Shown here piece after piece: positions 3,863 to 62,663 of a DNA stretch of 64,000 nt (positions within the stretch are counted from its first letter, which is position 1; each line of letters opens with the position of its first letter). Source of the stretch: Adineta vaga (lineage: Eukaryota; Animalia; Rotifera); assembly GCA_021613535.1 (NCBI GenBank), contig CP075497.1, forward strand, positions 868,001 through 932,000. Direction: 5' to 3'. The notes under the pieces were generated by a model. It did not search any database. It was not told where the DNA came from and was given only the letters and a program-made list of their open reading frames with translations. A program made the translations under genes and the position numbers.

Positions 3863-3920
3863 ATCTTGAGGGTGTGGGTGAGGTTACACAAAAGTGTTAA
3901 AACTACACTCGCACATTCCC
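3863..3920. repeat. telomeric-repeat hairpin element (right arm degenerate)
   Basis: ATCTTGAGGGTGTGGGTGAGG...ACACTCGCACATTCCC, ~100 bp after the stop at 3764. Confidence 0.75.
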
Positions 3921-4033
3921 ATTCGATTTTTATCGAATCCATAAATGAATTTGAGTAGGATTCCATTCATTTCTTATCACTATACTAGTTGGATCAAGAA
4001 AATCTCATAAAAACAAAACAACTTCATCTTCCT

Positions 4034-5485
4034 CTACTGTGAGAGGTCAGTTTTAAATACTTGATATGTATCATTGACAATCTGAACATTTAATGCACAT
4101 AAGTTTGGCATGGAATAAACTAAATCAACTACATCCATTGTATTTTCAACATAGATTCGAAGCAATGCACATTGTTTACCAAATGAAGTTTTGGATAATC
4201 TGCACGCGCTGTTGGCTATTGAACCAATATTCGGGCTTACTATCAGTATATTCTTGCACATCAAGCTGACGTATATAAGAACTGAAAGTATTGAGCAATA
4301 TATTTTCCAGAACGTTCATATTTCCACAAGTAATTTTCAATTCATACAGGCACGGTGCACGATCGAACAGCATTTGTAATTGTTTTTGTATTTCAACATT
4401 GTTATTACGAATAAAAACATTCAGTAATTTCAAATGATCAAGTATAGGCAGAGCAGAGTATAGTATGTTGTGTGTTGGAAGTGTAAGAGAAAGATAACGT
4501 ATATTCTAAAAATGAATTCAATCTAGCATCGAACATGGAATTAATGAATCGCAGTAATATTGTAATTGATGCACATGAGTATATGACCAGTAATCAGTTT
4601 CATTAGGAGACGTTGATTTAGATCTAATTTCAGGATGTAAAATGTCGTATCGATTGAAACTATATGGTAAAGTATAGAGACAGAGGTAAGGCGACAATTG
4701 ATCCATAATCCATTCACATCGTACAAACCAATGATGTTCTCTTAACCAAAAGGGACTACTAAAAGATTGAATCAGTAATGCATGAACTTCATTATCTTTC
4801 ATACTAGACATCCAACATTGATGTTTCATTTTGAGTTGAAAAGTCTCAAGTTTTGGCAAACGGTCAACAATGATCTTTTCCCATTGACATCCATTCATAG
4901 GAATGGAAAATGTAAGTCTCGCATACTGATTACAATCAACACGAAGTCTCTGCCACAACCAATTTTTTACATTCCCTAAGTACGTATCGATGGATAAATA
5001 TTTAAGATGAGGCATATTTGTCATTAATTGTATTAATGTACTGGAAAGAATATTCACTGATTGTATGATCAGATGTTTAAGATATGGAGATGTAACCGTA
5101 GATCTTTGAAAAGATGTTCTTGCAGGAAAACTCATGTCAATATGACAAGGAATTAATTTCTGTTAGTGTATTGCAAGATAAAATGCGATCAAATGAAAGC
5201 GATCGCAAGTTAGAGAAAATATTCGATTGGATCTGGCGTTTCATTGTCGTTTGAGAAATAGATAGATGCAATTCGAGCAGGAATTACAGATACATGCTGT
5301 ACAAGAATATTTGAAACAATTTTCTTTGACGCTGATCGAAAATCGAGATGACAATGACGACCTGATGAGAAAAATAACGAATTAAATCGATAATTGAGAC
5401 CATACAAAGTATGAAAAAGACGAACATAATCCAGGAATTCGAATAGATATAATAATATTTCATTGGATAACAATTCCAAACTCAT
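4034..5485 (-). pseudogene. F-box/LRR-like protein, frameshifted
   Basis: MSLELLSNEILLYLFEFL (F-box) starts at ATG 5485. FWLREHHWFVRC and LYTLPYSF motifs are typical of this expanded family. Split over four ORFs in different frames. Confidence 0.7.
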
Positions 5486-5517
5486 AATTTGTTCCTTTTT
5501 GGTCAGAACTTCTGACC

Positions 5518-5563
5518 ATCTTGAGGGCGTGGGTGTATCTCTTCTTCTCTCACCCACTCTCAA
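5518..5563. repeat. telomeric-repeat hairpin element
   Basis: ATCTTGAGGGCGTGGGTG-TATCTCTTCTTCTCT-CACCCACTCTCAA. Confidence 0.9.
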
Positions 5564-6314
5564 AACTACGTGCAATCAGTTTCCACCGTTGCAAAAGTAG
5601 ATCGCACAGAATTTTGCTTTTTTTTTAAATAAAAAGTACACAATTCTAATAAACTGCTCTTTGTAAATTGTAGATCTTTTCACACTGCATCTGGTGATAT
5701 ATTTCTTGTTTAATAAAAATATACCAGATAAAAAAATAAAATACAAAATGTACTATTCATTATACCCCAATCATAACTTAAATTCGACACAACAATAGTC
5801 CTTATCGAAACTTTATTAATATGATATTGGTTGAACTATTATCAAAGAGCATAGAAAAATAGAGCTTTGTTTTCTCTATCACCTCATACAAAAAGAAAAT
5901 TTCTTCAAGCCTTCTAGAAGAAAATAATGTATCTTCGACATTACTTTTGGATACCCCTAAGTATTACATTACAATAACTAATATTAAAAACAAAATGTCT
6001 TTTTCTTGCTTTTCTTTCTTTAGTTAATCTTCATTATAATAGTATGCGTTAAAAAATACTTATAATTCAATACAATATTGATATGTAAAATTGTTAAGAA
6101 AAAAGTCTTTTTTTCATCGATTTGCCTGGATTTATATTCATTTCAGTATAATTAATGATAATGAAAAGATTAAGGAACAAACGCTTTTCTTTGTTAAGTC
6201 AATGCAAAAGAAAAGATAAATATTTATTTCTATGACAAAATAATTTTATTAACAGAATGAATAGTGAAAAAAATGTTGTATTCTTTTGCCATAAAAGATT
6301 TTAATAATAATATA

Positions 6315-11301: not shown

Positions 11302-11362
11302 ATCTTGAGGGTGCGGGTGCGGGTGTGGGTGTGGATGAAGAAGATATACCCACACCCTCAAA
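11302..11362. repeat. telomeric-repeat hairpin element
   Basis: ATCTTGAGGGTGCGGGTGCGGGTGTGGGTGTGG-ATGAAGAAGATATA-CCCACACCCTCAA. Confidence 0.9.
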
Positions 11363-17572: not shown

Positions 17573-18031
17573 GACAATCACCGTCGAATAACGAGATCTG
17601 ATCTTCCCCTCAAAATATTGTTTCTCGGTGATAGTGGCGTAAACAAGGTATGATGAATTTTTTGAAGAGAAAATTCTTGTTCGAATCTTTTTCTATAGAC
17701 AGCCATTTTATTTCGCTTTGCCGATGACTCATTCAACTCCTCGTTTATTGCCACAATTGGTATTGACTTTAGAATAAAAACCATCCAAGTGGATGGACGT
17801 GATATTAAGCTACAAATATGGTAAGTAGACGTCTGTCTATATCTGTTTGATGGGTGTGGAGATGTGTGGAGATGTAAATATTTTCCTTCATTATCCGCAC
17901 GCACATCCACCCACCCACTCCTATATGATCATACTATCCGCCATGGACGAGTATATCATTAGAATCATTCTATTCTTTCTTCCTCGTTCAGGGATACTGC
18001 CGTCCAAGAACGTTTCCACACCATCACTAGT
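17573..18031 (+). pseudogene. Rab8/Rab10-like small GTPase, degenerate and 3'-truncated; exons 17573-17647, 17699-17820, 17992-18031
   Basis: Spliced translation LKILFLGDSGVNK|[41 protein letters not shown]|DTAVQERFHTITS. P-loop G>N and DTAG>DTAV changes. Ends at a hairpin. Confidence 0.88.
17847..17921. repeat. telomeric-repeat hairpin element inside the Rab intron
   Basis: TTGATGGGTGTGGAGATGTGTGG...CGCACGCACATCCACCCACCCACTC. Confidence 0.75.
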
Positions 18032-18109
18032 AAGGGTGTGGGTGTGGGTGTGGGTGGGTGACGTTGTCTATTCATTATATGCCAACAATCTCACCCACAC
18101 CCTCAAGAT
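18032..18109. repeat. telomeric-repeat hairpin element
   Basis: AAGGGTGTGGGTGTGGGTGTGGGTGGGTG-spacer-CACCCACACCCTCAAGAT. Confidence 0.9.
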
Positions 18110-24492: not shown

Positions 24493-24563
24493 GGAGGGTG
24501 TAGGTATGAGTAAGGGTGTATCGCTGTTTGGGTAAAATTTGAGCACTGCACCCTCAGCCTCAA
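24493..24563. repeat. telomeric-repeat hairpin element (degenerate), inside the hAT element
   Basis: GAGGGTGTAGGTATGAGTAAGGGTG...CACCCTCAGCCTCAA. Confidence 0.7.
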
Positions 24564-25586: not shown

Positions 25587-25673
25587 TGAAGTGTGTGTGT
25601 AACTTTCTCTTCCATACACCCAGATCCGCCCACCCACACCCACACCCACACCCACACCCACACACACCCCTAG
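25587..25673. repeat. telomeric-repeat hairpin element with long (CCCACA)n arm
   Basis: GTGTGTGTGT-AACTTTCTCTTCCATA-CACCC...(CCCACA)5...CCCCTAG. Confidence 0.8.
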
Positions 25674-39535: not shown

Positions 39536-42500
39536 CTATTGATATTTGTGAATCTTTTTTTCAATATCCATCTATTCCTGTTCTTTATGGACATGTACAT
39601 TTTTTGTATAATAATAATCAATCAAGATTAATGGAAGATATTGGAAATGTTTTATTACCTGATTATATTTGTTATGATAAATATTTATGTAATTCTATTC
39701 AACCGACGTTTTCTTATGAAAATTCTAGTTGTCGATATCGTCAAGAAATAATTAATATTGATCTTGATTATGATAAATTTTTATTATCTGTAGAAAAATA
39801 CTTTCGTCATTGTGCAATTCCATTTATGATGAATCATAATGAACAACATTCATCGATTTATTATTGTAAAAACTCTTCGAAATATATTTCAAAACATCGT
39901 CTTATGGATCATATTATTGATTGTCATTTAGGTGATGATGAAGAACAATTTGAACTTAGTTGTTTATCAAAAGATAAATATCGTTTTAAATGTTATGATC
40001 AAGATAAAATATGTTGGTCATCATCCGTCGATCATAATGTTTGTATTATAAATAATCAAAAACAAAATTTCAATCAAATATCATTTCAAAATATTTGTGA
40101 TGGAATTCTTCATCTTATATCACAAGAAATCAATGGAGAAATTCATAATGATGAAACAGAATGTCAATATTGGCCATGTAATAATATTTATACAAGATGT
40201 GATAATATAAAAACTTGTTTAAATGGTGAAGATGAATATGGATGTTCGGAAAATGATTGTTCATTAAATGAATATTTATGTATTTCACCAATAACATATA
40301 AAAGAATGTGTTTACCATTAAATGAAATGGGTGATAATATAATTGATTGTCTTGGAGGAACAGATGAACTTCAACATTGTTATTTATTACAAGAAGAAGA
40401 AAATAAATTTCAATGTTGGAATAATACACAATGTATTTCTCTTGAAAAATTATGTCATTATTTCTTTGATTGTCGTTTAGAATCTAATTGTCAAATTAAT
40501 GATGAAATATGTTATAAAAATAGAAATAATTATTATCAAATTGAAGATTTAATTTGTCAATTAAATGATATTCAAAATAGAATTAAAAGTTTTTCATTAA
40601 AAACTGCACGAATTTATCCTCAATTAGAAACAAATGTATCTCATAAAAATCTCAATAATAATCATCATCGTGAAATTCATATTAAAAATATTCGATCTGA
40701 TTTTGGTTATGATGGATGGATATGGTATTGTCATCGTGGATTACCTATTATTACATGGTTAGATAATGAAACATTTATACAACAATGTTTATGTCCTCCA
40801 ACTTATTATGGTGATTTATGTGAATATCAGAATGAACGTGTTAGTCTTACATTACGTTTATTATCTATTAATCTAAATAATGTATATACATTTTTAGTAT
40901 TATTAATGGATGATGATGGACAAATTAATTCATATGAACAATTTATATTTACAACACAATGGGATTGTTCAAAAAAATTTAATCTTTATCTTTTATATTC
41001 TACTCGTCCAAAGAATTTATCGAAAATATATTTTATACATATTGATGCTTTTGATAAATATACAATGATATATCATGCTAGTTGGTATTTATCAATTCCA
41101 TTTCTTTTTCTACCTGTCAATCGAATTGCAGCAAATTTATTTATACCATTTCAAAGTATTCAAAATTTACCGACTTGTAATTTAACATGTAATCAAAATG
41201 GTCAATGTATGAAATATATTAATATAGAAAAATTCTTTTGCCGTTGTTATTTGAATTGGACTGGTCTATATTGTGATATACCTGTTGATATTAATGATTG
41301 TTCAAATGATTATTGCGAAAATAATGGTCAATGTATTGTTTTACAAAATAATATAAATGCTTATCGATATGTTTGTATATATTCAGAATTATTTTCTAAT
41401 TTTGATTGTGAAAATAAAAATAAAAAATTAGAAATAATATTAAATAATATAGATATTCCATCATATATATTATTCTATATTATGATACAACATGGTGAAT
41501 CATGGGAAACAATAGTTTTTATCAAAAAATTAATGTATAATCAAAATATGATTCAATTGTATATTGATAGAATAATATCTCTTGCATTTATTAAATTTTC
41601 TAATGATTATTATTTAGCTGTAACACGAACAGAAGAGAATAGTTATGAAGATATTCATACACAAATAACTCCTAATCAACGATGTTTACATATTAATGAA
41701 TTATTTCCAATAACATTATCACGTATTCAACGAATCAAATATTATCATCAAGTTTGTTACAATCGATCAATCGATATCTGGTGTTTTTATGATGAAATTT
41801 ATATGTGTTTATGTACAATAGATAATCATACAAATTGTCTTAATTTTAATCATAATTTAACACTTACATGTCGACATAATGATTTTTGTGAAAATAATGG
41901 TTTATGTTTTCAAGATGATATTACTTGTCCAACAAATACAATATGTATTTGTACAGATTGTTATTTTGGTAATCGATGTCAATTTTATGCAAAAGCTTTT
42001 GGTTTAACACTTGATGATGTTCTTCGTTATGAAATTCAACGTAATTTAACATTTTCTCAACAATCAACAACAATTAAAGCAAGTGCAAGTATTACAATAC
42101 TTATATTTTTTTTAAGTTTTATCAATGGAATTTTTTCTATTTTAACTTTTCGTCAAAAACAATCACAACAAGTTGGTTGTGGATTATATCTATTTAGTTC
42201 ATCAATTACGACGATTCTTACTATGATTTTATTTTTGATTAAATTTTGGTTTGTAGTTTTATTTCAAATTGATTTTGTTGTTAATCGAATAAGTCTTCAA
42301 TTAAGTTGTAAACTTATTGAATATTTATTGAAATCTTCAATATATACAGATAATTGGTTAAGTGGATGTGTGGCAATTGAACGAGCATATTCAGTTTTTA
42401 TTGGAGTTAGTTTTAATAAAATGAAAAGTAAATATATTGCTAAACGAATAATCTGTATTTTAATCATTTTGATTATGTTATCTATTATTCATGAACCTAT

Positions 42501-42969: not shown

Positions 42970-43114
42970 ACAACTCTTATAGAACAATCTAATATTAAAT
43001 ATATCATAAAAAAACGTCTGCTCCCTTTTTGAGTATGAATCTCTCTTCGTCAAAAACACTCATATCCTCATTCTCATTCTCTGTTGTTTTCCTTCTATAG
43101 TGAACAGTTCGTTT

Positions 43115-43166
43115 CTGAGGGTGTGGGTGCAGAAGATATACCTACACCCACACCCACACCCTCAAG
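43115..43166. repeat. telomeric-repeat hairpin element
   Basis: CTGAGGGTGTGGGTG-CAGAAGATATACCTA-CACCCACACCCACACCCTCAAG. Confidence 0.9.
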
Positions 43167-46033: not shown

Positions 46034-46441
46034 GTGAGGGTGAGGATGAGAATAGCTATCATGATTTGTAGTTCGTCCAGACTAAAGACTGAATGAAACT
46101 CTAGGCTTCGAGACTTACAGATTTCATGAATATTCAAGAAACTTTGGACACTACATGAAATTACTGTAACGCGCAATAAATAATACTCATCGTATAGAGA
46201 TAAGAAAATAGTTTTTTGCTTCTTAGAATTCTTTCCCACTGTAGATTTATAATTAAAATGTTTCAAGATGATATAACTAATGTGAAATACGATTGTACCT
46301 AGGGGAAACATTGTGACTTCGCCCATGAAGTCTCTTGACGTCCCTTGAAGTCTTTGGAAGTCTTGAAGCCTACAGTTTCATTCAGTCTTTAGTCTGGACG
46401 AACTCTAAATCATGGTAGCTATTCTCATCCTCATCCTCAAG
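46034..46441. mobile_element. ~410-bp foldback element with ~80-bp TIRs ending in the telomeric motif
   Basis: GTGAGGGTGAGGATGAGAATAGCTATCATGATTTGTAGTTCGTCCAGACTAAAGACTGAATGAAAC... is mirrored at ~46359-46441. Confidence 0.85.
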
Positions 46442-46711
46442 AAGTTTTCATTACATTCTTCCTTCAATTTTTTTTCGTTTCTTGGTCGGAAGCTTGAGCT
46501 CGGCGTAGTACGGGACTTTATAACTAGTGAACTCTACATCTTCCAAAATTTAGTTAAAATTTCTGCTGTCAACTTTAATTTTTAAATTAAACTTCAGATG
46601 ATACTACTTAAAATTACGTTTAATTTTGCTTGAAACTTAATTCTGCTTGAAATAAATATATAGTAAAATCTCGTCTATAATCATAACTGATGATGATAGT
46701 CTCACAGGCTT

Positions 46712-46756
46712 ACCCACACACTGTTCTACGTACACCCACAACCACACCCTCAAGAT
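46712..46756. repeat. telomeric hairpin right arm
   Basis: CACCCACAACCACACCCTCAAGAT. Confidence 0.75.
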
Positions 46757-47078: not shown

Positions 47079-47150
47079 TTGAGGATGTGCGTGAGTTGGT
47101 GTGGATGTAACCCTAAACATTACTCACACGCACATCAACACCCACCCTAA
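47079..47150. repeat. telomeric-repeat hairpin element
   Basis: TTGAGGATGTGCGTGAGTTGGTGTGG...CTCACACGCACATCAACACCCACCCTAA. Confidence 0.75.
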
Positions 47151-47211
47151 TGGAACGCTAGAAGGATCATAGTTAACATATTGAGGCCGACGTTTATTGT
47201 GGCACACTCGT

Positions 47212-47759: not shown

Positions 47760-47878
47760 AGCATCTTGAGGATGTGAGGGTGTGGGTGTGGATGAGTGCG
47801 AGGTGGATAATAAAAGAAAACGCTCTTACCCTCAGACCTCACATCCACACCCATCCACATCCACACCCTCAAGATGCT
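47760..47878. repeat. telomeric-repeat hairpin element with perfect 12-bp termini
   Basis: AGCATCTTGAGG...CCTCAAGATGCT; no flanking direct repeat. Confidence 0.92.
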
Positions 47879-48383
47879 ATATTTTAGATATATTCATTTC
47901 AATAAAATGAAATTCAGGAATCAAAATTTAACCTACAGAAGTTACTTACCCATGTTGACAAACAACTGCAGAGCAGCATACAAATTCTCGCCAAACTAAA
48001 ATCAACTGCCGATAATCAATTGCATTAAAATAAACGAGACCTCTGTGCTTTTACAATGACACCACAAACAAAAACCACAAAGAGACAATTCTAAAATTTA
48101 AAACTAATCCCAATTCTATCTAAAAAAAGCATACCCACTTCTTTCATCCGTGACACGCTTTACCGAAGAACATAACAATTCGTCATCCCGAACCTCGATC
48201 CACTGACACCAATACTATGAACGCTCCAAATCCTGGAACAATTCAGGAGTCATAAAAATGATATTTCCCAATAAAATTTCTTTCGAAAGATATATACTAC
48301 TGAGCTAATAACTACAACACTCCTGAAAATTAACTAACTATTAGATAACAGAATTATATATATATTATTGTGGTAACTCTTTT

Positions 48384-48408
48384 CACACCCACCCATATCC
48401 ACACCCTC
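48384..48408. repeat. telomeric hairpin right arm
   Basis: CACACCCACCCATATCCACACCCTC. Confidence 0.65.
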
Positions 48409-49090
48409 TTGTAAATACTTCATTCGATTATACTGTTGCGTTCGATATAAAATATTTTGAAAATCTTTCTTTAGACTTTCATTAAGATCTAACGTTTCAT
48501 TTTTGTGAAAACAGAATGACGTTGTTTACTCAATTTTGAACTGATAAAACATTTTCTGTATATGAAAAAAAGCTTTTTCTGGTTATCTCGCATTATGTGA
48601 TTTAATGCAAAAGAAGTTAACATGTTTTTCTTTTCTCTATATATTAATATATTAATAGACCTCGCCATACATAAAATGATTAGAAGTTAGTGACGATAAA
48701 ACAGAAAGCTATTTTCTCAGAATTTAATACGAAGAACATCTGCTTTTCTTCACCGATTTATACAACCGAACTCTGACTAGTTGGCAGTGAGTAGCTGTAT
48801 TTTAAGTTCTAGATAACGACAGTCTTTATTTCTGGTAGAATTTAATATTTGAATCGTTGAGAGACTAGTAAGTAGACATTTTTTTTTTGTATAAGATCAA
48901 CATTGAAAAAGCACTTTACTGTTTGTTGACTAAAAGATATTTGTGGCATTATGTTTTGTTACCACTGAAAGAGTTTTTTTCTTTCAAAAAGTTTATCGCT
49001 TTTAAAGAAGTTCAGAAAAATATGATTTTAAGATGAATTTTCTCTACTGTAAATCGTATATTGTAGATTACAGTACAAAAAAAAGTCAAA

Positions 49091-50045: not shown

Positions 50046-50822
50046 CAATTGAAACATGTTTTATTTGACACATATGTCAAACGATATTGAGCAAATAAAA
50101 TACTTTTAAATCAAGTAGCACCAGAATTACCAACAAACAATAGATCATAAACTCTTATCTACATTCTTGCATTTGATGTTGTATTTTTATTTATTTGTTG
50201 TATTTACTTGCTTTCGTCTGTCATATTTATATTGTATTGTTTATTTGACTAACATAAAATCAACATCAGTTTTTATCCTTTTTCACTATGTAACATATGG
50301 AAAAAGTTTCAGCCTCAAGCTAAGATTGTCTTTCAAATACTGAATTGAAACAAAAAAGACAAGACTTTAAAATTTTTACTTTGAATTGGTATGGAGATAT
50401 GATAACACATAATCAAATTCATAAGAAATATTCTAAACCTTATTCTGTATTAATTTTTTTTTCGGTGAGTATTTCTGATTGTCAACAGAATGGCATTTAC
50501 ATGATTTTATTATATAGAAAAATTTATTTATATATTGACAATTCCATTTGGTTGAGTTGTTTTGATTGAGAATGTAATTCAAATGCATTTCATTCATAAG
50601 AATGACAATTCTTTAAGAACGAAGATAAAGATTTCATTTAGTTTGAGAATGTTCAGAAAAAATAATATGAATTATGATAATGAAATTCGGATCATTTTCA
50701 TTGACAGCGCAATAAAAAAATTACTTAGGGCAATTCAGAAGTAGTATCGTCAAGGTCTTATTTTCGGATCGCAATCATTTTACCGACAAACCTTTTATAA
50801 AGATACGATATTAAAAAAACTG

Positions 50823-50890
50823 TAGGTGTGGGTGAGGGTGAGATTGTGGCTGTCTCTCTGGTACCGTCATTCTCATCCTCATCCATCCTT
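50823..50890. repeat. telomeric-repeat hairpin element
   Basis: TAGGTGTGGGTGAGGGTGAG...CTCATCCTCATCCATCCTT. Confidence 0.7.
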
Positions 50891-51151
50891 GCTCCAGCCG
50901 TATACATTGTCTTTCCCTATCTACGTATTTGCACTCTGTTCAAGAGAATCTAGCCCAGTCTCTTGATTGTGTTGTACTTTGCAAACTTCTAAATTTAGCC
51001 ACCTAAGATAATATCAAATTATAGTGATAGAACAAGTTCTTGAAAAATATGACTGTCGGCAAAGTGTAGCGGACTCCTCGAATACTCTATAAAGATGAAT
51101 CATTAACATAAACGTCATTTTCATATTTTAACGAGCACACAAAACGTCAGA

Positions 51152-51203
51152 TTGTGGGTGTAGATGTGTCTCTTCTGTTTGCTCACACCCATACCTTTAA
51201 GAT
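51152..51203. repeat. telomeric-repeat hairpin element
   Basis: TTGTGGGTGTAG-ATGTGTCTCTTCTGTTTG-CTCACACCCATACCTTTAAGAT. Confidence 0.7.
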
Positions 51204-53372: not shown

Positions 53373-53431
53373 TAAAGGGTCGGTGTGGGTGTGGACAAGG
53401 CTATACTCCTAAACTACATCCACACCCTCAA
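53373..53431. repeat. telomeric-repeat hairpin element
   Basis: TAAAGGGTCGGTGTGGGTGTGG-ACAAGGCTATACTCCTAAACTA-CATCCACACCCTCAA. Confidence 0.85.
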
Positions 53432-56400
53432 AAACTTCTACAGACATTTTGATTTGATTCTATAGGTTACTTACAGTCGATTTTCTCATTTGTAACTCAT
53501 ATTATTTACACAATTAAATCGATACTTTCTCTCTCTCTCTCTCTCTCCTTTTATTAATCTAATAAAAGATGGCAATTTGCTTCGTAATTTATTGTTTCGA
53601 GTATGTATACTAAATATATTCTGTAATCGTGATACTTGAAAATAAAAAGTTTTAATGATATCTTTTGTGCAACAGGATCTGAAAGAGAGTGTTGAAGTGT
53701 TCAAGGGTAGAAATTTGGACTCAACCTCTCCTCGCCCCCACAGACGTCACCGACTTTATCGAAGTAAACTATTAGAGAAAATGTAGATTTTGTAATTAAA
53801 AAAAAGCAACAGAAATATTGATTATAAATTTTATTTGCAACACAATAGAAAACAGATTTATCGTGTTTCATATTTTTAATCTTGCAATAGGGATTGCACT
53901 AAAAGCTTTTTTAATATTTGTTACCATTAAAATCGTGTCGAATATTATTTATCATCCGGTATGATTTGTTAATATATCAAGGCCATTTTATAATCTCTCA
54001 CATCGTATACCGGATAAAGTGAAATTTTCATTATTTAATAACACTTTTGTTTGATACTATAAAAAAGAAAGATATAGCAACCGTTATCATTTAGCTTTTT
54101 AATACTATGTTCATTGAATTTCAGTAGATTGGTGAATGATGTTACCTATGAGAACGTTATTCTATCTCATATTATTACATTTGGTGATTGGTTCACCTCA
54201 AATCAATCTTGATCTTACTGACTGGGTAAATTATATTCAAAGTGATGCTGTGTTACAACATGATTGTATTTATGTTGCTACTTCGATTAAAAAATGAATT
54301 GATTCTCATCAGATAATTTCGTATTGTATGAGTGAATGGCCAACAGAATGGATGATACGAATAAATAGTCAAGATCGAAATTTTACTTTTGCTCAACTAA
54401 TTCAACAAAATATTACGAGTGAACAATTATATCATTGGTCCGCACCAATGGATGTTATTGAACGTTATCAGTTGTATTTGAATCAATTTCCAACCTCGAA
54501 TGAATTCTTATCGATGGGAACACAATTGTTTTACAATTGTACATCGCCAAGATTTGGTGCATATTGTGTCAATATTCATTGAATGCGAATGAATTCTATA
54601 ATTTATCGTTGAAAGAAATCATTGATAGCTTTTATCTTCAAGAATATATTTAGCAACAACATTAACATGTTACGTACATTTACAATGTTATAAAGTGTCT
54701 TCATCAGCATGTCTTGATTGGAGTAATATATGTGATGAAATTGTTGATTGTCAAAATAGAATTGATGAAAAATCTTGTTAGCCATTAGAAATTAATACAA
54801 AATTTGCCATTTCTTATCGTATTACAAATGCGCCAACATTTGCATTAACGAGAGGTAATTGGAGGAATATGCACATAATACCATTATATGAACATCTTTA
54901 TCAATGCAATACAATAATTTATAATGATGATTCTTTAGATTGTAGCAATTCTAATATGTATCAATGTATTAACTCATCGAAATGTATTTCAAAACATCGT
55001 GTTTGTGATAGTATGAAGAATTGTGATTATGGAGATGATGAAAAATGCGATGGAATTTCCGAATCCTGTTTAGGATATGGATCTAATAAACCATTCAAAT
55101 GTACAATAGCAAATATTTGTATCTCTCAATATTTAGTTGGAAATAGATTGTGTAATTGTCCAATGGATCAATATAATTTATGTGATGATGAATCACCTGA
55201 TAAACATTATATTAGAAAGCATATCTATTTTCCAACTATTTGTGATGGTTTTACAGAACTTATACCTGTTCTTATTGATGGACGAAATGAAACAGATAAA
55301 ACAGAATGTGAATATTGGCAATGTAATAATACTTATACAAGATGTGATGGTATTTGGAATTGTTTTAATGGTGCCGATGAAATTGATTGTAATCCATTTC
55401 CACGATTGAATTCTCCATATCATCATCATCATCATATATGTGTTTCACCTAAGACAAATCAATTTATGTGTTTATCAATTAATAAAGTGAATGATGGTAA
55501 AATTGATTGTCTTGGTGCTTTTGATGAACCGAAATTATGTCGAAAAAATAATTATGGACTGAACGATGAAAAATTTCATTGTTCAAATCATATCAATGAT
55601 TCTTGTGTATCTCTCAGTAAATTATGTATTGAAAGCAAATGTGAAAACAATACTGATAAACAACTTTGTGATTCCAACAGAAATGAGACCGATATCGACT
55701 CGTTTTGTGATCAAAAATATGAATCAATTCGTTCTGATGTTGAAAATTTTCTTTGTAATCATCTCGATGATACTAATAAACCAGAGATTCTACATTTTTC
55801 CTTAAATGAAAAAACTAATTTCTCCAAAACAAAAACACAACAAAGTACTAATATCATAATGACACATTCTTCTATTTTATCAACAACTCGTCAATATCAA
55901 AATCAACGCGTTAGTTTAACTTTGCAATTTCGAGTATTTTCCGATTCTTTACGAACATTATTTTCATTGATTATTTTATTGATTAATGAAAGTAATGAAC
56001 GAATTCGAAAAACGATATTTTCTGTCAATGTAATCAAGGATGTTCAGGACAATATTGTAATATTCAACAAATAATTATTTGTAAATGTTCATGCGATTCA
56101 TTATGTATTGGTATTGCAGCTAACAATCGATCTATATGTATTTGTCCTTTAATAAACAAATGGGGTTCGCATTGCTCCTTTCAAAATACTATATGTCAAA
56201 ATGGAGGTCAATGTATACCTACCGATGAATATATAGAATATTGGAAAACAAATTTATATGTATTTGTTTAAAAGGTTTTAATGGAGAGAGATGTGAAATA
56301 TTTGATACAATAATTACTGTATTATTTGATAAAGATATTGTTTTACCGCAATCAATATTCTTTCATTTTATTCGACAGATCGATCATACTGCACCTGAAA

Positions 56401-57125
56401 ATGGTTCAACATTTAAATCAGTTATTACTAATCAAAGATCAGCAACTATATTAAATGGTCACGCCCCATTTCATGTTATTTTTGTTGAACTACCTGATAA
56501 AACATTTCATTTGATTACAATTCAAACAATTTACAATCAATCAACAACTATTGATCAAATAATTAATTTATTGAATCGTTGTAAACATATAAGAGAATTA
56601 TTTAATGAAACTATTATAAAATATCATCTTCTTCGTCGTATTAAATACGATCATTTACCATGTCAAACATATTCACCACAATTGACTTGTTTTTATGATG
56701 ATATTCATTTTTATTTATGTACAAATTTTGATCGTCAAAGAATAGCTAATTGTTTTGGTAAAAGTATTTGTGCAAAATGAAGGTCAATGTTTACAAGATA
56801 AAGCTATTTGTTCACAAACATCGATATGTGTTTGTCGAACATGTTTTCATGGAGTTCGTTGTCACTTTAGTTCACATTTATTTGGTCTTTCACTTGATGC
56901 TGTATTAGGATATCATATTCAATCATCTACTTTACAAATCAGTGTGATATTAACTATAATTTTAATTCTAGTAGGATTAGTTAATGGTGTACTTTGCATA
57001 TTAACATTTAAGAACAAAGAAGGAAATGAAATGGGTTCGGATTTGTATCTATTAGGTTTATCAATGGGTACTCTAATTACTACAATTCTATTTGCATTAA
57101 AAATTCTGGATACTTTTCATGGCAC

Positions 57126-57177
57126 AAGGGTGTGGGTACTACATCTGTCCAACATCTTCACCCACATTCACCCTCAA
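57126..57177. repeat. telomeric hairpin, left junction of the cargo
   Basis: AAGGGTGTGGGT-ACTACATCTGTCCAACATCTT-CACCCACATTCACCCTCAA. Confidence 0.92.
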
Positions 57178-57926
57178 CTTTTGTATTTAAAAACTTTCCA
57201 TCGCAAGCTTTTGAATAAGTTTGAACAATCATTACAACACGACAATTACCACAAAGTGTGTATTACATCCAAAATCAGTACAAAAAGGACTGTGTTGAGC
57301 TATATAAAGATGTTCCCAACAAAAAGGTTTTTCATCGACACTTGGTTGTGGAGGAAGGAGGAATACAGACCAAACTATATGATACAAATGTGCGGTGCAC
57401 TGAAAAAGGTTTTGAGGGAAGGGACAATAAAACAGTTCCAGATCCGTACCAAACATCTTTTTTCTATCCTTCTTACGTCCTCACCCTCTATTTCAGAAGA
57501 CTGAGGAAAAAAGACAAAATTCTTTCATTATATTTTATAAATAATGATAATTAGAGCTATAATAGTGTTTATCCATATTAATACTTTCACCTGGCTCAAA
57601 TCCAACTTATAACGAGACATACACTGATAGTTTCTTTTTTTGGCTGTATATCTCAATTACAAATCATGTCTTGAGAGTGGATATCTTGGTTTATATCGTG
57701 TATATCTCGCTTATTTACAGCTCATGTACCTACATACTGAGGATTTTCTTCTAGTCCTGATATAATATGTCAAACATTCTTTTTCTACTCTCGACAGAAA
57801 TAATCTTTACTAAAGCTCTATTGATCAAACAGTATAATGTCAGATTTGTCATTCTGATATATATTTTCTAATATTTTCACGTCTGTCAACTTGTCGTAAC
57901 ATATTAATTTCCTATAGTCAAAATCA

Positions 57927-59339
57927 ATGTTGCAGAGAAGAAATTTCCATTACGAAAATGAATATTCATCACTAACTCGTAATCATATTTGTCATTGCAA
58001 TTGTTCGAAATTTTATCATTTAATAGATTTTATCATTAATGCAATTATTCCAATTCTTGTCGGAGGTTCTACAATATTCCTTGTTATTCATCAAAATCGT
58101 CTGATTCAGAATAATTATGAACAAGATCAAGTAATCGCAACAGAACAACATGAGCAAGATCTTTACATTCAACAATCTATACGGAACGAAGATCTTATCA
58201 TACGGCAATTACAACGTCAACAAGATTTAGATCTTGCTCAACTTCGACGAGAACTTGATTTGGCTATAATTGAAAACCAAAGTCGAACAAGTCGAGATCT
58301 GTCTCAGCAGTATTATAACTTATTAGAACTTTATCGAGCTGAAGATTCGAAAATATCTAGAATAAATAGAGTAGAAGATCAAATCCGAGAAAAAGAACGT
58401 CTGCTTGAAATGACATTGATAGAATATCACAATGATCTCCTAGAGATTTTATTGAACTATGGATATTTTCGTGTGACTCAAGATAAAACTATTCTTTTGG
58501 AAATTCAAATGAAAACTCGAAGTATTTTACGAAAACTCGATCCTTCAAGACGAACGATTGTGTTCAAATCCATTATGGCAATAGGTCTCAATGATCATGA
58601 CTTACTAGAGGATAAAATAGACATTTTATCATCGACTGATTTACGTGGTGTTACGTTTAGTGATCTAGTTCTACATGAGTTTTCTATTCCGCAACATCGA
58701 ATAGCACAATTTTATGTTCCACAAAGTGATCTACGAAATGCTTCGTTTCAATTTCTTATTTTTGCAGGTACTTCAGTGGATCTATCTCGAACAAACATGT
58801 ATGGGACCAATTGGAATAATGCAATATTAGCTTTCTTTAGCATTGAAAATGCTTTAATGAATGCTGCTAATTTTCATCATTCATCAGTTACTGCTATGCA
58901 ATTTCGTTTCACTCAACTCAATTATGCTTCATTTAATTTATTGGAAAAATGTCATCAGTTACATTTTGAATCCTTACAAATGAATCATGTCGATCTGAGT
59001 GAAAATAATTTTAATGAATTATGGATTCTCCATGTAACAATGATCGACAGTAGTCTCAATCATACTCGTCATATGAAATCACATTTTGAAGACGTGAATA
59101 TGACGAGAACTGATTTTTCTAATTCAATATTTATTGGTGTAATTTTCAAAAAAGTTATTATGACACAATGTCAAATGGAGAATACGAAATTTATCAGTTG
59201 TATTTTTACCCGTTCAATTTTGGTTGGATGTCTCGGATTCAATCAGGCTAACTGGCATGATACTCAATTGACAAACACTCAATTACCAAACGGAACTCAT
59301 ATTTTACGAACTTGTTTAAATTGTATACAAACATTCTAA
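57927..59339 (+). CDS. TM + coiled-coil + pentapeptide-repeat protein
   Basis: Single N-terminal TM, Q/R/E coiled coil, SDLRNASF and TDFSNSIF pentapeptide repeats; intronless. Confidence 0.85.
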   Translation: MLQRRNFHYENEYSSLTRNHICHCNCSKFYHLIDFIINAIIPILVGGSTIFLVIHQNRLIQNNYEQDQVIATEQHEQDLYIQQSIRNEDLIIRQLQRQQDLDLAQLRRELDLAIIENQSRTSRDLSQQYYNLLELYRAEDSKISRINRVEDQIREKERLLEMTLIEYHNDLLEILLNYGYFRVTQDKTILLEIQMKTRSILRKLDPSRRTIVFKSIMAIGLNDHDLLEDKIDILSSTDLRGVTFSDLVLHEFSIPQHRIAQFYVPQSDLRNASFQFLIFAGTSVDLSRTNMYGTNWNNAILAFFSIENALMNAANFHHSSVTAMQFRFTQLNYASFNLLEKCHQLHFESLQMNHVDLSENNFNELWILHVTMIDSSLNHTRHMKSHFEDVNMTRTDFSNSIFIGVIFKKVIMTQCQMENTKFISCIFTRSILVGCLGFNQANWHDTQLTNTQLPNGTHILRTCLNCIQTF

Positions 59340-59576
59340 AAGAAACTAATACTTTTTCAAATGAATAAAAATAAAATTTTTATAGAAATTCAAACTTATT
59401 CTTGAGCATGAACAAATATTTAATCTTCAGTGAATGTTTTCTTTGAACATGTTTAACGATAAATATTGAGCGAGATAAAATTCTACTGTATCAAACTAAT
59501 ATAATGTTTCAACAACCACAGAAATAGAAAAAAAGTATGTGTTCATGTTAACTAATGATTGACGAAGAGAATAATT

Positions 59577-61046
59577 ATGGCAAACAATGATCTCGACAAC
59601 ACTTCTATTAGAGCAAATCAGACTAATAATGAAAGAAGACAACGACATTTTAACTCAGGACGACATTGTTGTGGTATTGAATGTATTGAATGGTTAAAAT
59701 TAATTTCCAGTGCTGGAATTCCTCTAATGATCGCAGCAATCACTGTGCTGATCACTATTCAGCAACAGAATGTCGCTCAAAAAAATCGCGAGAAAGATTT
59801 GATTAACGCTCAAGAACAACGTAAACAAGATCTCGAAGAAGCTCGAACTCGACGAGCTGAAGATAAGGAAATAGCTCAACAACAACGTGAACAAGACAAG
59901 GATAGTTCACGATTACAGCGTGAACTTGATTTGAAAATTGCTAATGATAAACGTGAATTAGAAGAGAAAATTGCTGAACAGCAACGAATAGTAACTCAGG
60001 AACAACGCCAACATGAATTAGATATAGCTTATAAGACTCGACTCAATGAACTTGCTTTAGAAGATGATCGACAAAAAGAAGCAATTCTTATACAATATCA
60101 ACGTGATTTAGCCGATGTTCTTCTAAATCACTGGGATAATCTTCAAGGCAAACGTGATATGACGAGATTGGCTATTCAGATGAGAACACGTACAGCACTT
60201 CGACTTCTTAATCCCGAACGACGAACTATAGTTGTTCGTTCGCTATATGATGCACATTTGCTTCAGATAAAATTTGAGGAGGATGAATCGGCATTCTTAG
60301 CCTTCGCTAATCTTTCTTCAGTCGATTTTGGACAAAACAAGGATTCATCTGTAGATGATATGTGGTTCTTCTATTCACATTTGATCGTACTTGGAGCTGA
60401 TATGCGTAATGCTTCATTTCGTAATGTCTATTTAGCCAGTTCATTCTTAGGATTCAACGAAGCAAATTTAAATGGTGTTTCTTGGAAACATTTTACTATC
60501 GATAATGTTCGATTTGAACGAGTATCAATGAAACAAGTAATGTTTCAACATGGAAACATATTTAAAGTGGATTTTTTTCGTATTCAGTTGGATTTTACTT
60601 TATTTGAATATACGAAAATAACTGATAACTTCACTGTGACAATGTCATCTATGAAATGGTCAAATATTCGACATTCGAAAATGTGTCGTGCAGAGTTCAC
60701 AAAGACTTCTATAACAGATAGTCATTTCCTTAATACTACTCTTTTATGCGTCACATTTAAAGAAAATAATATGGAAAGAATGAAATTCACTGATCTAATC
60801 CTGGAGCTGGTGATCTTTGAGCGAGTGAATTTGACAAACTGTATCTTTGGGAATATTTCAGTAAACAATGTCATTTTTCGAAATGTAACTATGCGTGGTT
60901 GTCAGGGATTTCATGGTACCGAGTGGAGCTCAACTCATTTTATTTCGACAACTGATCCGCATGGAACACTTATTCAAGATAGCAACTCTGGCAAGTTTTT
61001 TTCAGAACTATTTGCACGCTGCTCAAGCATAAAATGCATTGAATGA
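59577..61046 (+). CDS. TM + coiled-coil + pentapeptide-repeat protein (tandem paralog)
   Basis: WLKLISSAGIPLMIAAIT TM, coiled coil, ANLSSVDF, ADMRNASF and ANLNGVSW repeats. Confidence 0.85.
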   Translation: MANNDLDNTSIRANQTNNERRQRHFNSGRHCCGIECIEWLKLISSAGIPLMIAAITVLITIQQQNVAQKNREKDLINAQEQRKQDLEEARTRRAEDKEIAQQQREQDKDSSRLQRELDLKIANDKRELEEKIAEQQRIVTQEQRQHELDIAYKTRLNELALEDDRQKEAILIQYQRDLADVLLNHWDNLQGKRDMTRLAIQMRTRTALRLLNPERRTIVVRSLYDAHLLQIKFEEDESAFLAFANLSSVDFGQNKDSSVDDMWFFYSHLIVLGADMRNASFRNVYLASSFLGFNEANLNGVSWKHFTIDNVRFERVSMKQVMFQHGNIFKVDFFRIQLDFTLFEYTKITDNFTVTMSSMKWSNIRHSKMCRAEFTKTSITDSHFLNTTLLCVTFKENNMERMKFTDLILELVIFERVNLTNCIFGNISVNNVIFRNVTMRGCQGFHGTEWSSTHFISTTDPHGTLIQDSNSGKFFSELFARCSSIKCIE

Positions 61047-61174
61047 TAGTAGAAGCTGGCACATGACTTTGTAATAGATATCAGTACACTAGTGAGAGTA
61101 TCTGGTCATAAATATTGTATTTCTCTCTTACTCACATCCTTATTTCTCAATCTTTTCGTTCAAGAATGATGAAA

Positions 61175-61216
61175 TGAGGGTGAGTGTATACTACTCATTA
61201 ATACTCACTTGCAACC
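61175..61216. repeat. degenerate telomeric hairpin
   Basis: TGAGGGTGAGTG...ACTCACTTGCAACC. Confidence 0.55.
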
Positions 61217-61868
61217 ATGTCGAAATTTTTTGAAAACTTAAATTCGTATTCGTTTTCTTTAAACATTTTCGAAAGCGAAACTTACTATGCTCTTCGGTTT
61301 CGTCAATGCCTAGAACTCCGTTATTTTAAGCCTTCACCAATCTTGGAAATGACAGAAACTGATTGCTCAATGCTGAGCACTGCGGAATAAGATAAATCGA
61401 TAAGTAAAAACTACAAAGAACCTTCTATTGTATTTGCCATTTTATATGATAATTCTTCATAATTACATCCCGTTGAGCTAAAATTTTGTATACAAAATTG
61501 TTTCATCAAAATCTGAGTTGAGTTCGAAGGTAGAAATGATCCTTTAAGAAATGAATGAGCTATCGAAAATATTCTCATTATTGACCAGATAATATTCTTG
61601 AAGGGAACACAGAAATTTTCCTCAAAACTATTTAAAGTGTATGGAAATGAATTCGGTTCTAGACATTCTTTTCGAGTATGAGATTAGTTCTGAATCAAAC
61701 ATCGGTGTGAGGCTAGAACCAAAGAGCTAGCACGAAAAACGAATATTTAGCGGAAATTTTTTCTGATAATGAATTCTCGTTCGTGAAAACAAGCTTATTC
61801 GATTCAGAATTTAATTCTGCATCGAATGATAGTGCTTCTATTCACGAGAAAACGCTAAGGAAATTTTT

Positions 61869-61930
61869 ATCTGAGGGTGTGGGTGTGGGTACTACATCTA
61901 TCCAACATCTTCACCCACACCCATACCCTT
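61869..61930. repeat. telomeric hairpin, right junction of the cargo
   Basis: ATCTGAGGGTGTGGGTGTGGGT-ACTACATCTATCCAACATCTT-CACCCACACCCATACCCTT. Confidence 0.92.
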
Positions 61931-62602
61931 AATTCAATAATAAATGCATTTCATTGTCTTATTCCATTTATTATTACTGTGATTTCTCAACCAATTATCA
62001 TTACAGTACTTGTTCGACAACAATTACAGATCCATCCTAAACAAAATTATTGAAATCTAATAAGTGAACAATTTCAACAACATCATCATCATCTATTCAT
62101 AACTCCATTTATTCTATTGATTCTTGGTATACCTCGTTTAATCATTTCATTCATTGCAGGTTGTATTAAATCAAATGATAATCTATGGTTATTACTTATC
62201 GGATATTTTGTTTCATTCATTCCATCAATGCTTACTTATATTGTATTTGTTTATCCATCAAAATTATATAAACAAAGATTTCTGAAGAATATCAAGCAAT
62301 ATCAACGAATGATACAAACAATATAACATCTCTAATCTAACAGGTTAGTAAAAAAAAGGAGAAAAATCTCATTATGTAAATGATAATAAAGTGCATAATA
62401 AGGTGATATGTTCTTTTAGATTAGCTTGTTGATGATCGAATCATAAAATGAAGAACAATATTCGATGTTTTTTTGCTTTTTGTCTTGTATAGCGTAGCAA
62501 TGATTATTGCTTTGGTTTTTATATCGCGATCATTAATAAATATCATGTTAATAACAGAATAATAACTTTCTTTCATCATAGGTGAGAAATTAGATATTTA
62601 TT

Positions 62603-62663
62603 TAAGGGTGTGAGGTGTGGTTCGGTTTAGAGTACAGTCTGACCCACATTCTCACCCTCACCC
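62603..62663. repeat. telomeric-repeat hairpin element
   Basis: TAAGGGTGTGAGGTGTGG-TTCGGTTTAGAGTACAGTCTGA-CCCACATTCTCACCCTCACCC. Confidence 0.8.

What the first reader, a model, noticed from the sequence alone, without database searches (positions are those of the whole stretch)
3863..62663. Dense family of head-to-head telomeric-repeat hairpins with variable spacers partitions the region into gene-sized cassettes
Seen: at least 24 copies (3863, 5518, 11302, 14751, 17847, 18032, 24493, 25587, 29923, 36802, 38993, 39417, 43115, 46034, 46712, 47079, 47760, 48384, 50823, 51152, 53373, 57126, 61869, 62603) of (ATC)TTGAGGGTGTGGGTG-spacer-CACCCACACCCTCAA(GAT). The outer boundary is fixed, the hexamer number varies, the spacer varies, and no TSD is seen in the copies checked (11302, 43115, 47760). 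Almost every gene is bracketed by them. Known (from memory): TGTGGG and TGAGGG are the reported bdelloid telomeric repeats. Each segment therefore ends in the G-strand and the next begins with the C-strand, like telomere-capped mini-chromosomes joined end to end. Inference: these are either attC-like palindromic recombination sites of a eukaryotic gene-cassette system, or telomerase-templated scars of double-strand-break healing followed by fusion. Either would be a route for shuffling and capturing accessory or foreign genes. No recombinase is encoded in this window.
Basis: partly seen in the sequence, partly recalled or inferred. Interest (0 to 1): 0.95.

Follow-up and report, generated by a model that had tools for sequence, protein, structure and literature searches.

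The report
Head-to-head telomere-repeat scars between genes
In this subtelomeric stretch of a bdelloid rotifer chromosome, gene-sized DNA pieces are joined by short junctions of two telomere-like tracts pointing at each other. These look like scars of broken DNA ends that were capped and then rejoined, which is a plausible way for this animal to shuffle and capture genes.

Summary
The window (Adineta vaga-type genome, chromosome 6, 0.87-0.93 Mb) holds 52 telomere-like arms against about 2 by chance. Of the 24 listed sites, 15 are clear G-strand/spacer/C-strand junctions, 3 are degenerate, 1 is a 405-bp version, and 5 are single arms or same-orientation pairs. Genome-wide, head-to-head outnumbers tail-to-tail 190 to 2.

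They are neither MITEs nor attC-like sites. There is no target-site duplication. The two arms of a junction match each other no better than arms of different junctions. Each arm is polar: 0-10 nt of a leader (AGCATCTTGA), then TGAGGG, then TGTGGG repeats.

An intact paralogue on chromosome 3 runs through both ends of one 3.7-kb segment with no telomeric repeats. A GPCR-like gene has lost about 107 codons, replaced by junction, 4.7-kb cassette, junction. The 405-bp version is two Athena retroelement 3' ends facing each other. Similar junctions occur in A. ricciae, A. steineri and Rotaria.

Best reading: these are scars of RNA-templated healing of free DNA ends (by telomerase or Athena reverse transcriptase) followed by end-to-end joining. 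The enzyme and the joining step are inferred. Recurrent spacer families keep a copy-as-a-unit model alive. Other first-stage notes of this scan reported the same leader elsewhere in this genome.

The parts
3865..3886 (+). single G-strand arm with leader ATCTTGA; a paralogous block starts here
5521..5562 (.). head-to-head junction, spacer family a (pyrimidine-rich ATCTCTTCTTCTCTC)
11305..11362 (.). head-to-head junction, family a spacer in the other orientation; left cap of the GH59 segment
14751..14776 (+). single G arm with the full leader AGCATCTTGA; right cap of the GH59 segment
17847..17920 (.). degenerate junction; a paralogous block ends at 17851
18029..18107 (.). head-to-head junction
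24493..24563 (.). degenerate head-to-head junction
25587..25670 (.). long C arm (25627-25670) with a weak G arm; a 669-bp multi-copy repeat starts at 25670
29924..29970 (.). head-to-head junction; left cap of the GH78 rhamnosidase segment
36804..36935 (+). G arm, about 85 nt of antisense Athena-like 3' end, then a second G arm in the same orientation (classical Athena addition, not a hairpin)
38999..39039 (.). degenerate head-to-head junction
39419..39536 (.). head-to-head junction with a 77-nt C arm
43114..43166 (.). head-to-head junction, family a spacer
46035..46439 (.). 405-bp junction: two Athena-like 3' ends (85-nt arms, 92% complementary) facing each other, each joined to its flank through a TGAGG-type tail
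46709..46754 (-). two C arms without a G partner
47080..47145 (.). degenerate head-to-head junction
47760..47878 (.). head-to-head junction with the full leader on both sides; the right arm is 16 nt shorter in contigs laid from all three DNA runs
48383..48409 (-). single C arm upstream of a GPCR gene
50820..50885 (.). head-to-head junction
51149..51197 (.). head-to-head junction; the block 51149-53356 has its paralogue at chromosome 3, 0.446 Mb, minus strand
53377..53432 (.). head-to-head junction, family c spacer (Athena-tail-like); its C arm caps the break at 53433 that is unbroken on chromosome 3
53433..57124 (+). 3.7-kb segment (LDLa/EGF-like gene and 5' part of a GPCR-like gene), an 87-95% identical copy of chromosome 3 18060751-18065380, broken at both ends
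57125..57180 (.). head-to-head junction, family b; cuts the GPCR-like gene
57181..61869 (+). 4.7-kb inserted cassette with two pentapeptide-repeat ORFs, capped by a C arm on the left and a G arm on the right
61870..61931 (.). head-to-head junction, family b, with the same 39-nt core as 57125; the GPCR-like gene resumes after it, about 107 codons short
62603..62668 (.). degenerate junction, family c-like spacer

Best explanation
Each arm is the start of a telomere-like tract that an RNA-templated polymerase added to a free DNA 3' end. The tract begins with 0-10 nt of a constant leader (AGCATCTTGA), then usually TGAGGG, then TGTGGG repeats. The polymerase is telomerase or the reverse transcriptase of the telomere-attaching, endonuclease-lacking Athena/Terminon retroelements. 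A 'hairpin' is the place where two ends extended in this way, pointing at each other, were joined. That is why the order is always G strand then C strand. The spacer (median 16 nt) is a short further copy, either of the template RNA upstream of its telomere-complementary tail or of an older junction. The junctions are therefore repair scars that stitch together DNA of different histories in the subtelomere: pieces of host genes, repeats, and whole captured cassettes. Shown here: the polarity of the arms, the leader, breaks at arms where a paralogue is intact, a gene with a deletion and an inserted capped cassette, a long version built from Athena 3' ends, and occurrence in other bdelloid genera. 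Inferred: which enzyme makes the tracts, and how the two ends are joined. Candidate joining steps are template jump of the reverse transcriptase onto the other end's tail, microhomology end joining, or copying of spacer plus C arm from an existing junction so that the two G tails can anneal.
For: Orientation: the head-to-head pattern has 190 loci against 2 tail-to-tail genome-wide; in 264 kb, 42 against 2 pairs within 60 nt. Polarity: the first hexamer is TGAGGG in 59% of arms against 13% of inner hexamers, p=3e-12. The leader suffix is graded from 0 to 10 nt. There are 38 genomic sites with the full leader and unrelated upstream sequence. The leader also starts long tracts that carry an Athena 3' end with a hammerhead motif (L011) and a tract added to a truncated Athena copy (L008). 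Independence of arms: complementarity 0.467 within junctions against 0.494 between them, and arm lengths are uncorrelated. No TSD. Breakpoints: 9 of 28 ends of paralogous blocks lie within 25 nt of an arm, against 5.7% expected, p=1.6e-5. Chromosome 3 runs uninterrupted through both ends of window 53433-57124, while the window continues into arms after 3 nt (TTG) and 1 nt (A) shared with the leader. The A. ricciae orthologue of the GPCR-like gene aligns to 56640-57084 and 61874-62299, with about 107 codons missing between. Athena link: 46035-46439 aligns on both arms to Athena 3' ends; 36804-36935 is a classical Athena addition; family c spacers resemble the 14-17 nt between the hammerhead cleavage site and the tail. 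Literature: Athena elements prime on exposed ends and at breaks and are then capped by telomeric repeats (PMC3846280; PMC6431247). Telomeric repeats and Athena fragments were seen at deletion breakpoints in A. vaga lines, with transient neotelomeres 'leaving only scars' (PMC13564844). Other species: A. ricciae, A. steineri and Rotaria carry such junctions. One Rotaria sample has a junction with long arms (79 nt or more, and 68 nt) inside an LTR element that is intact in another sample.
Against: Spacers are not random. Family a has 39 near-exact genomic copies of a 21-mer, and about 40 of the 52 matches to family d are junctions of this kind. Both have the same phase of telomeric repeat on both sides, and subfamilies share variants in the inner arm. 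The two junctions around the 4.7-kb cassette share a 39-nt core. Independent end fusions would not give this, so some copying of junction cores as units must be added to the model. Only two A. vaga junctions and one Rotaria junction could be compared with an unbroken copy. The left side of the Rotaria case is an assembly gap. No RNA with the leader complement was found, and no experiment ties the tracts to telomerase or to Athena reverse transcriptase. An untested first-stage note (s1-502113) reports a filled and an empty site with a 7-bp direct repeat elsewhere in this genome.
Confidence: 0.62

Rival explanations
1. The whole hairpin (leader, G arm, spacer, C arm, leader) is a small non-autonomous mobile unit. 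It is copied from master copies through DNA or RNA and captured at breaks as a linker between two ends, or inserted like a MITE or foldback element.
For: Spacer families with conserved junctions on both sides and many near-identical copies. A 39-nt identical core at both ends of the 4.7-kb cassette. A family a-like pyrimidine spacer also occurs in Rotaria. An untested note reports a filled and an empty site with a 7-bp repeat.
Against: No TSD. Termini are graded rather than precise. Arm lengths range from 13 to 77 nt and are uncorrelated within a unit. Many single arms exist, and arms with the same leader start long telomeric tracts followed by Athena. At the one place with an intact reference, the flanks beyond the junctions are not collinear with it.
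Confidence: 0.2
2. The hairpins are recombination sites of a gene-cassette system (attC-like). Circular cassettes integrate by site-specific or homologous recombination between hairpins, leaving hybrid sites on both sides.
For: Gene-sized units lie between junctions. The 4.7-kb cassette is flanked by two junctions with the same core and different outer arms, as attL/attR would be. The strands can fold (z -1.6 to -6.2).
Against: Pairing of the arms is not maintained. No recombinase is among the 20 largest ORFs. Genes lie in both orientations. Junctions cut coding sequence and come with deletions. Arms are polar tracts that start with microhomology at broken ends.
Confidence: 0.06
3. The hairpins are functional intergenic elements (insulators, terminators or small-RNA precursors) kept by selection between genes.
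For: Intergenic position, ability to fold, and presence in several genera.
Against: No compensatory conservation of the stem. Many copies are degenerate. Some lie inside a broken gene. No Rfam family reaches its threshold. Next to no RNA contigs lie on the 6-kb stretch tested.
Confidence: 0.05
4. The junctions are assembly artefacts at telomere-like repeats.
For: Short-read contigs often break at the arms.
Against: Contigs of three studies span several junctions. The same structures are in independent assemblies of four other species.
Confidence: 0.01

Closest known systems
Neotelomeres, fusions of neotelomeres and inward telomere fusions (TTAGGG)n-(CCCTAA)n in human cancer genomes (PMC11293586)
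   Same: Telomeric repeats are added to a broken end in standard orientation, and two such ends are then joined so that the G strand meets the C strand; short repeat tracts remain at the fusion.
   Different: Here they are germline, fixed, very dense (about one per 2.7 kb) and very short. They carry a constant non-telomeric leader and recurrent spacers, and they join gene-sized pieces rather than chromosome arms.
Athena/Terminon endonuclease-deficient Penelope-like retroelements at bdelloid chromosome ends (PMC6431247, PMC3846280, PMC8557442)
   Same: A 3' end with a hammerhead motif and reverse-complement telomeric repeats primes on exposed G-rich ends or at breaks. 5'-truncated copies are capped by telomeric repeats, and host genes are caught between elements. 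Examples in this window are 36804-36935 and 46035-46439.
   Different: The papers I could read describe head-to-tail chains with repeats in one orientation. Here the dominant form is two tracts facing each other, with only about 16 nt or nothing recognisable of the element between them, plus a 10-nt leader that those texts do not mention. The primary papers of 2007, 2008 and 2017 were not available to me.
Transient neotelomeres at radiation-induced breaks in A. vaga (PMC13564844)
   Same: Telomeric repeats and Athena fragments were seen at deletion breakpoints. The authors propose that neotelomeres form and are removed during repair, leaving scars.
   Different: That work reports clipped reads at a few breakpoints. 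It does not describe head-to-head junctions, the leader, the spacer families or captured cassettes.
Twin priming and endonuclease-independent insertion of LINE-1 at breaks (from my own knowledge, not checked here)
   Same: Reverse transcription is primed from both DNA ends of a break, giving inverted structures. There is no regular target duplication, and deletions occur at the site.
   Different: A different element class. Here the copied RNA part is mostly its telomere-complementary tail.
MITEs / foldback transposons
   Same: Short, multi-copy, with inverted terminal repeats and sequence families.
   Different: No TSD, graded termini, independent arms, and flanks that are not collinear with the intact copy.

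Membership tests
MITE / foldback DNA transposon | target-site duplication of constant length | tested here: not met
   41 junctions: best flank repeat 1.15 nt against 1.10 nt for mismatched flanks
MITE / foldback DNA transposon | precise, constant termini and matching inverted repeats | tested here: not met
   leader present as a 0-10 nt suffix; arms 13-77 nt, uncorrelated, no more complementary within than between units
MITE / foldback DNA transposon | insertion into otherwise collinear sequence (empty site) | tested here: not met
   at 53433 and 57124 the intact chromosome 3 copy continues into sequence unrelated to what lies beyond the junctions; about 320 bp of a gene is missing at 57125/61931. 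Only these places could be tested.
MITE / foldback DNA transposon | families of copies sharing internal sequence | tested here: met
   spacer families a, b, c and d
Integron-type attC / gene cassette system | site-specific recombinase associated with the sites | tested here: inconclusive
Integron-type attC / gene cassette system | secondary structure conserved while the sequence varies | tested here: not met
   no excess pairing within junctions
Integron-type attC / gene cassette system | intact cassettes in one orientation | tested here: not met
   ORFs on both strands; junctions cut a GPCR-like gene
Neotelomere / telomere-fusion scar | G-strand repeats added 5'->3' onto each flank, so only the G-then-C order occurs | tested here: met
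   190 against 2 genome-wide; 42 against 2 locally
Neotelomere / telomere-fusion scar | the tract starts where a sequence that is intact elsewhere is broken | tested here: met
   two junctions against chromosome 3; one in Rotaria against another sample; block ends are enriched at arms, p=1.6e-5
Neotelomere / telomere-fusion scar | synthesis by telomerase from its RNA template | not testable with these tools
   the telomerase RNA of bdelloids is not in Rfam or in the papers held; the leader strings joined to telomeric repeats were absent from the held library, and the papers holding the bare 10-mers were unrelated
Athena/Terminon terminal addition | 3' end with a hammerhead motif and a reverse-complement telomeric tail joined to a G tract | tested here: met
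   met for 46035-46439 (alignment to L008/L011; its CUGAUGAG core is lost), for 36804-36935 and for L008 and L011. For the short junctions only family c resembles such ends. Rfam hammerhead models did not score even on L008/L011.
Athena/Terminon terminal addition | head-to-tail arrangement with repeats in one orientation | tested here: not met
   the junctions are head-to-head; same-orientation neighbours also exist (21 G-G and 24 C-C neighbour pairs)

The most novel reading that the evidence does not exclude
Bdelloids have a regular, reverse-transcriptase-based way of bridging free DNA ends. Each end receives a copy of the 3' end of one class of RNA (the telomerase RNA template with its flank, or the hammerhead-released tail of Athena/Terminon), and the enzyme or end joining then links two such ends. 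The leader and the spacer families would then be a direct read-out of that RNA. The pathway would be the route by which linear DNA fragments, foreign ones included, are built into subtelomeres.
Probability: 0.3. Interest if true: 0.9.

Novelty: new variant of a known kind. Interest (0 to 1): 0.72.

Why it matters
Bdelloid rotifers survive massive chromosome breakage and hold more foreign genes than any other animal, yet how fragments become part of a chromosome is not known. These junctions mark, base by base, where ends were healed and joined. They show a whole 4.7-kb cassette placed into a broken host gene. The GH59 and GH78 genes, which belong to mainly bacterial families, each sit in their own segment capped on both sides. 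If the leader and spacers are copies of the templating RNA, the enzyme and RNA can be identified from sequence alone and tested in irradiated lines. The junctions would also serve as genome-wide markers for old breakpoints.

Tried and rejected
Rfam at gathering thresholds gives only a tRNA in the window. At permissive thresholds the junctions hit many microRNA precursor models, all below threshold, which is a generic hairpin effect. Hammerhead models missed even the clear Athena ends, so Rfam was of no use here.

Laying contigs of four runs on 46000-51999 gave no empty allele. Most 'joints' were cross-matches between arms of different junctions. The only RNA-labelled run covers part of the GPCR region and is from another organism label.

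An all-against-all comparison of the 264 kb held locally found too few paralogues to give more broken-versus-intact pairs.

The pentapeptide ORF of the cassette has no homologue at E 1e-5, so I cannot call the cassette foreign.

The key papers (PNAS 2005 and 2007, MBE 2017) are not in the held library, and the Science 2008 paper, for which only a DOI was at hand, was not requested. I therefore could not check whether inverted repeats or the leader were described there.

As a result the second paralogue (chromosome 3, 0.446 Mb), the filled/empty site of note s1-502113 and the candidate source at chromosome 1, 11.09 Mb were not examined.

I first took the junctions for MITE-like elements. I dropped that after the TSD test, the arm-independence test and the chromosome 3 comparison.
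Full report
**Where the window lies.** The window is contig 6, 868001-932000, of a 100.8-Mb genome in six contigs. A protein hit names a contig of 20,354,754 bases as Adineta vaga, and that is the length of contig 3. This matches the published chromosome-level assembly, whose subtelomeres are rich in repeats, foreign genes and (TGTGGG)n (PMC8494291; PMC7943196). GC content is 27-37%. The larger ORFs include a GH59 and a GH78 (rhamnosidase) glycosidase, which belong to mainly bacterial families. They also include two pentapeptide-repeat proteins, a trypsin, GPCRs, LDLa/EGF proteins, a Pif1 fragment and a FLYWCH protein.

**The observation.** A 13-mer of the arm occurs 15 times against 0.01 expected. 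A periodic scan finds 52 arms against 0-6 in shuffles. In the window plus 200 kb sampled from the same chromosome arm there are 42 G-then-C pairs within 60 nt and 2 C-then-G pairs. Genome-wide the ratio for a strict pattern is 190 to 2.

- 15 are clear junctions.
- 3 are degenerate junctions.
- 1 is a 405-bp version.
- 5 are single arms or a same-orientation pair.

Short-read contigs from three studies span several junctions, so they are not artefacts of assembly.

**Anatomy of an arm.** Arms are polar. Read from the flank inward they begin with a variable part of one leader, AGCATCTTGA. The matching suffix is most often TTGA, often ATCTTGA or CATCTTGA, and never longer than 10 nt. The 15-mer that joins the full leader to the first repeat occurs 38 times in the genome and 0 times as a reversed control, and what lies upstream is different each time. 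The first hexamer is TGAGGG in 59% of arms but in only 13% of inner hexamers (p=3e-12). After that come TGTGGG units in variable number, giving arms of 13-77 nt.

The two arms of a junction are independent. Their complementarity (0.467) is not above that of arms taken from different junctions (0.494), and their lengths do not correlate. There is no target-site duplication. The strands can fold (z -1.6 to -6.2), but that follows from their composition, not from conservation.

**The leader marks the start of telomere-type tracts in general.** Near the end of contig 3 (L011), a gene fragment is followed by the full leader, about 100 nt of repeats, and then the antisense 3' end of an Athena element with its hammerhead motif. 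In L008 a tract starting with ATCTTGA was added to an Athena copy truncated to 84 nt. This is the known behaviour of these endonuclease-deficient Penelope-like elements. They prime on exposed G-rich ends or at breaks through a tail of reverse-complement repeats placed just after the hammerhead, and are then capped by new repeats (PMC6431247; PMC3846280). The window holds a classical case at 36804-36935.

**Junctions are breakpoints, not insertions.** Blocks of the window that have paralogues elsewhere in the genome end at arms far more often than chance: 9 of 28 ends within 25 nt, against 5.7% expected, p=1.6e-5. Neighbouring segments have their paralogues at different places. For example, 51149-53356 matches contig 3 at 0.446 Mb on the minus strand, while 53429-57127 matches contig 3 at 18.06 Mb on the plus strand.

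For the second segment I read the contig 3 sequence across both ends. It carries no telomeric repeat and simply continues:
- On the left, the two copies share ...CAAAAACTTCTAC. Upstream of that the window has a C arm, and contig 3 has ordinary sequence.
- On the right, both read ...GCACAA. The window then continues GGGTGTGGG, and contig 3 continues CAAACTTATATG.
- The last 3 nt (TTG) and 1 nt (A) of the broken ends coincide with the leader positions just before GGG, as expected if the end paired with a template.

**A gene cut by a junction pair.** The right-hand break lies in a gene. The A. ricciae orthologue (an EGF/7TM protein next to the LDLa gene, L057) aligns with its residues 1-151 to window 56640-57084 and with residues about 259-395 to 61874-62299. 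About 107 codons are missing. In their place stand a junction, a 4.7-kb piece with two pentapeptide-repeat ORFs, and a second junction. The inserted piece has a C arm on its left and a G arm on its right, as a linear fragment healed at both 3' ends would. This confirms an earlier first-stage note on this window (s1-484762). The GH59 segment (11363-14750) and the GH78 segment (29971-36803) are capped in the same way.

**The spacers.** The median spacer length is 16 nt. Many spacers belong to a few families:
- Family a is a pyrimidine run, ATCTCCTCTTCTTTC, always followed by ACACCC. A 21-mer of it has 39 genomic copies with at most one mismatch.
- Family b is at both ends of the 4.7-kb cassette, where 39 nt are identical but for one base, while the flanks are unrelated.
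- Family c (TTAAGAGTATAG next to the G arm) resembles the 14-17 nt that lie between the hammerhead cleavage site and the tail in Athena copies.
- Family d (TGCAAGTCAGTGTCTCTAT) gave 52 matches, of which about 40 are junctions. Nearly all of those have a G arm upstream and a C arm downstream, and subfamilies share variants of the inner arm. One copy joins d and a (L050).

**The 405-bp junction.** The junction at 46035-46439 makes the link to Athena plain. Both 85-nt arms align to Athena 3' ends, though the CUGAUGAG core of the hammerhead is deleted in both arms. Each arm is joined to its flank by a TGAGG-type tail. It looks like reverse transcription primed from two facing ends.

**What the evidence supports.** Free 3' ends were extended by copying an RNA whose 3' part is the complement of leader plus repeats, and two extended ends were then joined. 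I cannot decide whether the enzyme is telomerase or the Athena reverse transcriptase.
- For telomerase: the leader would be the flank of its template, used when a non-telomeric end has nothing to pair with.
- For Athena reverse transcriptase: the tract would be a copy of the element's tail, and the spacer a run-off to the hammerhead-cut 5' end.
- The several spacer families favour a multi-copy RNA source such as Athena.
- The same leader on every kind of substrate, in A. ricciae as well, would fit a single conserved RNA.

**What independent fusions do not explain.** The constant phase on both sides of the family a and d spacers, and the shared cores around the cassette, are not explained by independent fusions. 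Three additions could account for them:
- A template jump from the RNA onto the other end's G tail.
- Copying of spacer plus C arm from an existing junction, which would turn one G tail into a C tail able to anneal with the other.
- Capture of a ready-made unit.

This is why I keep the mobile-unit rival at 0.2. An integron-like system is unlikely for the reasons given under rivals.

**Other species.** Head-to-head junctions occur in A. ricciae (two with TCAAGATG at the outer end), A. steineri, and Rotaria sp. Silwood1 and Silwood2. Some have pyrimidine spacers like family a. In one Rotaria sample a junction with arms of at least 79 nt and of 68 nt joins the interior of an LTR retroelement that is intact in another sample. 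Its other side is an assembly gap. Junctions thus arise with long arms and still form today, and the short, mutated ones in the window are old.

**What is known and what seems new.** Known:
- Short telomeric tracts lie between transposons and foreign genes in bdelloid subtelomeres.
- Athena adds to ends and breaks.
- Neotelomeres have been proposed at radiation breaks.
- Fusions of neotelomeres, and inward telomere fusions, occur in cancer genomes.

In the texts I could read, none of the following is described:
- The head-to-head junction as the dominant form.
- The 10-nt leader with TGAGGG first.
- The spacer families.
- The cases of segments capped at both ends, including one inserted into a gene.

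The leader strings joined to telomeric repeats do not occur in the held library, and the papers that hold the bare 10-mers are unrelated. However, the primary Athena and horizontal-transfer papers were not available, so prior description cannot be excluded. Several first-stage notes of this scan made the same guess about the leader on other parts of this genome. They are unchecked and are not independent evidence.

**Limits.** Only three junctions were compared with an unbroken copy. No experiment or RNA data bear on the enzyme. Genome-wide counts come from exact patterns and are lower bounds.

Noticed in passing
window 21304-21376 (+): A tRNA gene (Rfam 50.7 bits). One weak 'arm' of my scan (21345-21358) lies inside it and is a false positive.
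   Followed up: no
window 15272-16437: A 1.17-kb repeat with more than 20 copies at 80-93% identity on all six contigs, many near contig ends. It lies between the single G arm at 14756 and the C arm at 17898. Not classified.
   Followed up: no
window 25670-26338: A 669-bp repeat with at least six copies at 91-96% identity, all starting at the same base directly after a 44-nt C arm. It may be the capped 5' end of a telomere-associated element. A Pif1 2B-domain ORF lies next to it (26631-27269, minus strand).
   Followed up: no
window 36867-37561 and 20184-20550: A roughly 700-bp repeat family with more than 15 copies at 87-92% identity. A partial inverted copy lies 16 kb upstream in the same window.
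   Followed up: no
window 39406-42969 (+): A 1187-codon open frame without a Pfam match that begins inside the junction at 39419-39536. Its 3' half (41734-42939) aligns to the EGF/7TM protein of A. ricciae, and it belongs to a family with many paralogues at 65-85% identity.
   Followed up: partly
window 47840: Contigs laid from all three DNA runs lack 16 nt of the right arm of the junction at 47772-47873 relative to the reference. This is a repeat-number difference or a consensus error in the assembly.
   Followed up: no
G000 contig 1, 11090642-11090719 (+): The only close copy of the family d spacer far from a chromosome end without a telomeric G arm upstream; a C-rich tract follows it. It could be a source locus of the spacer or just a decayed junction.
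   Followed up: no
L065 8324-8562 against L067 5591-7642 (Rotaria sp. Silwood2): Three assemblies of this species differ downstream of a shared gene. One has a long-armed telomeric junction next to an 85-N gap, where another has 2 kb of an LTR retroelement.
   Followed up: partly
L011 311-405 (contig 3, about 17.7 kb from the end): The 95-nt C tract between an Athena 3' end and the leader has a higher-order period of about 36 nt, repeated almost three times. This is not simple hexamer addition.
   Followed up: no
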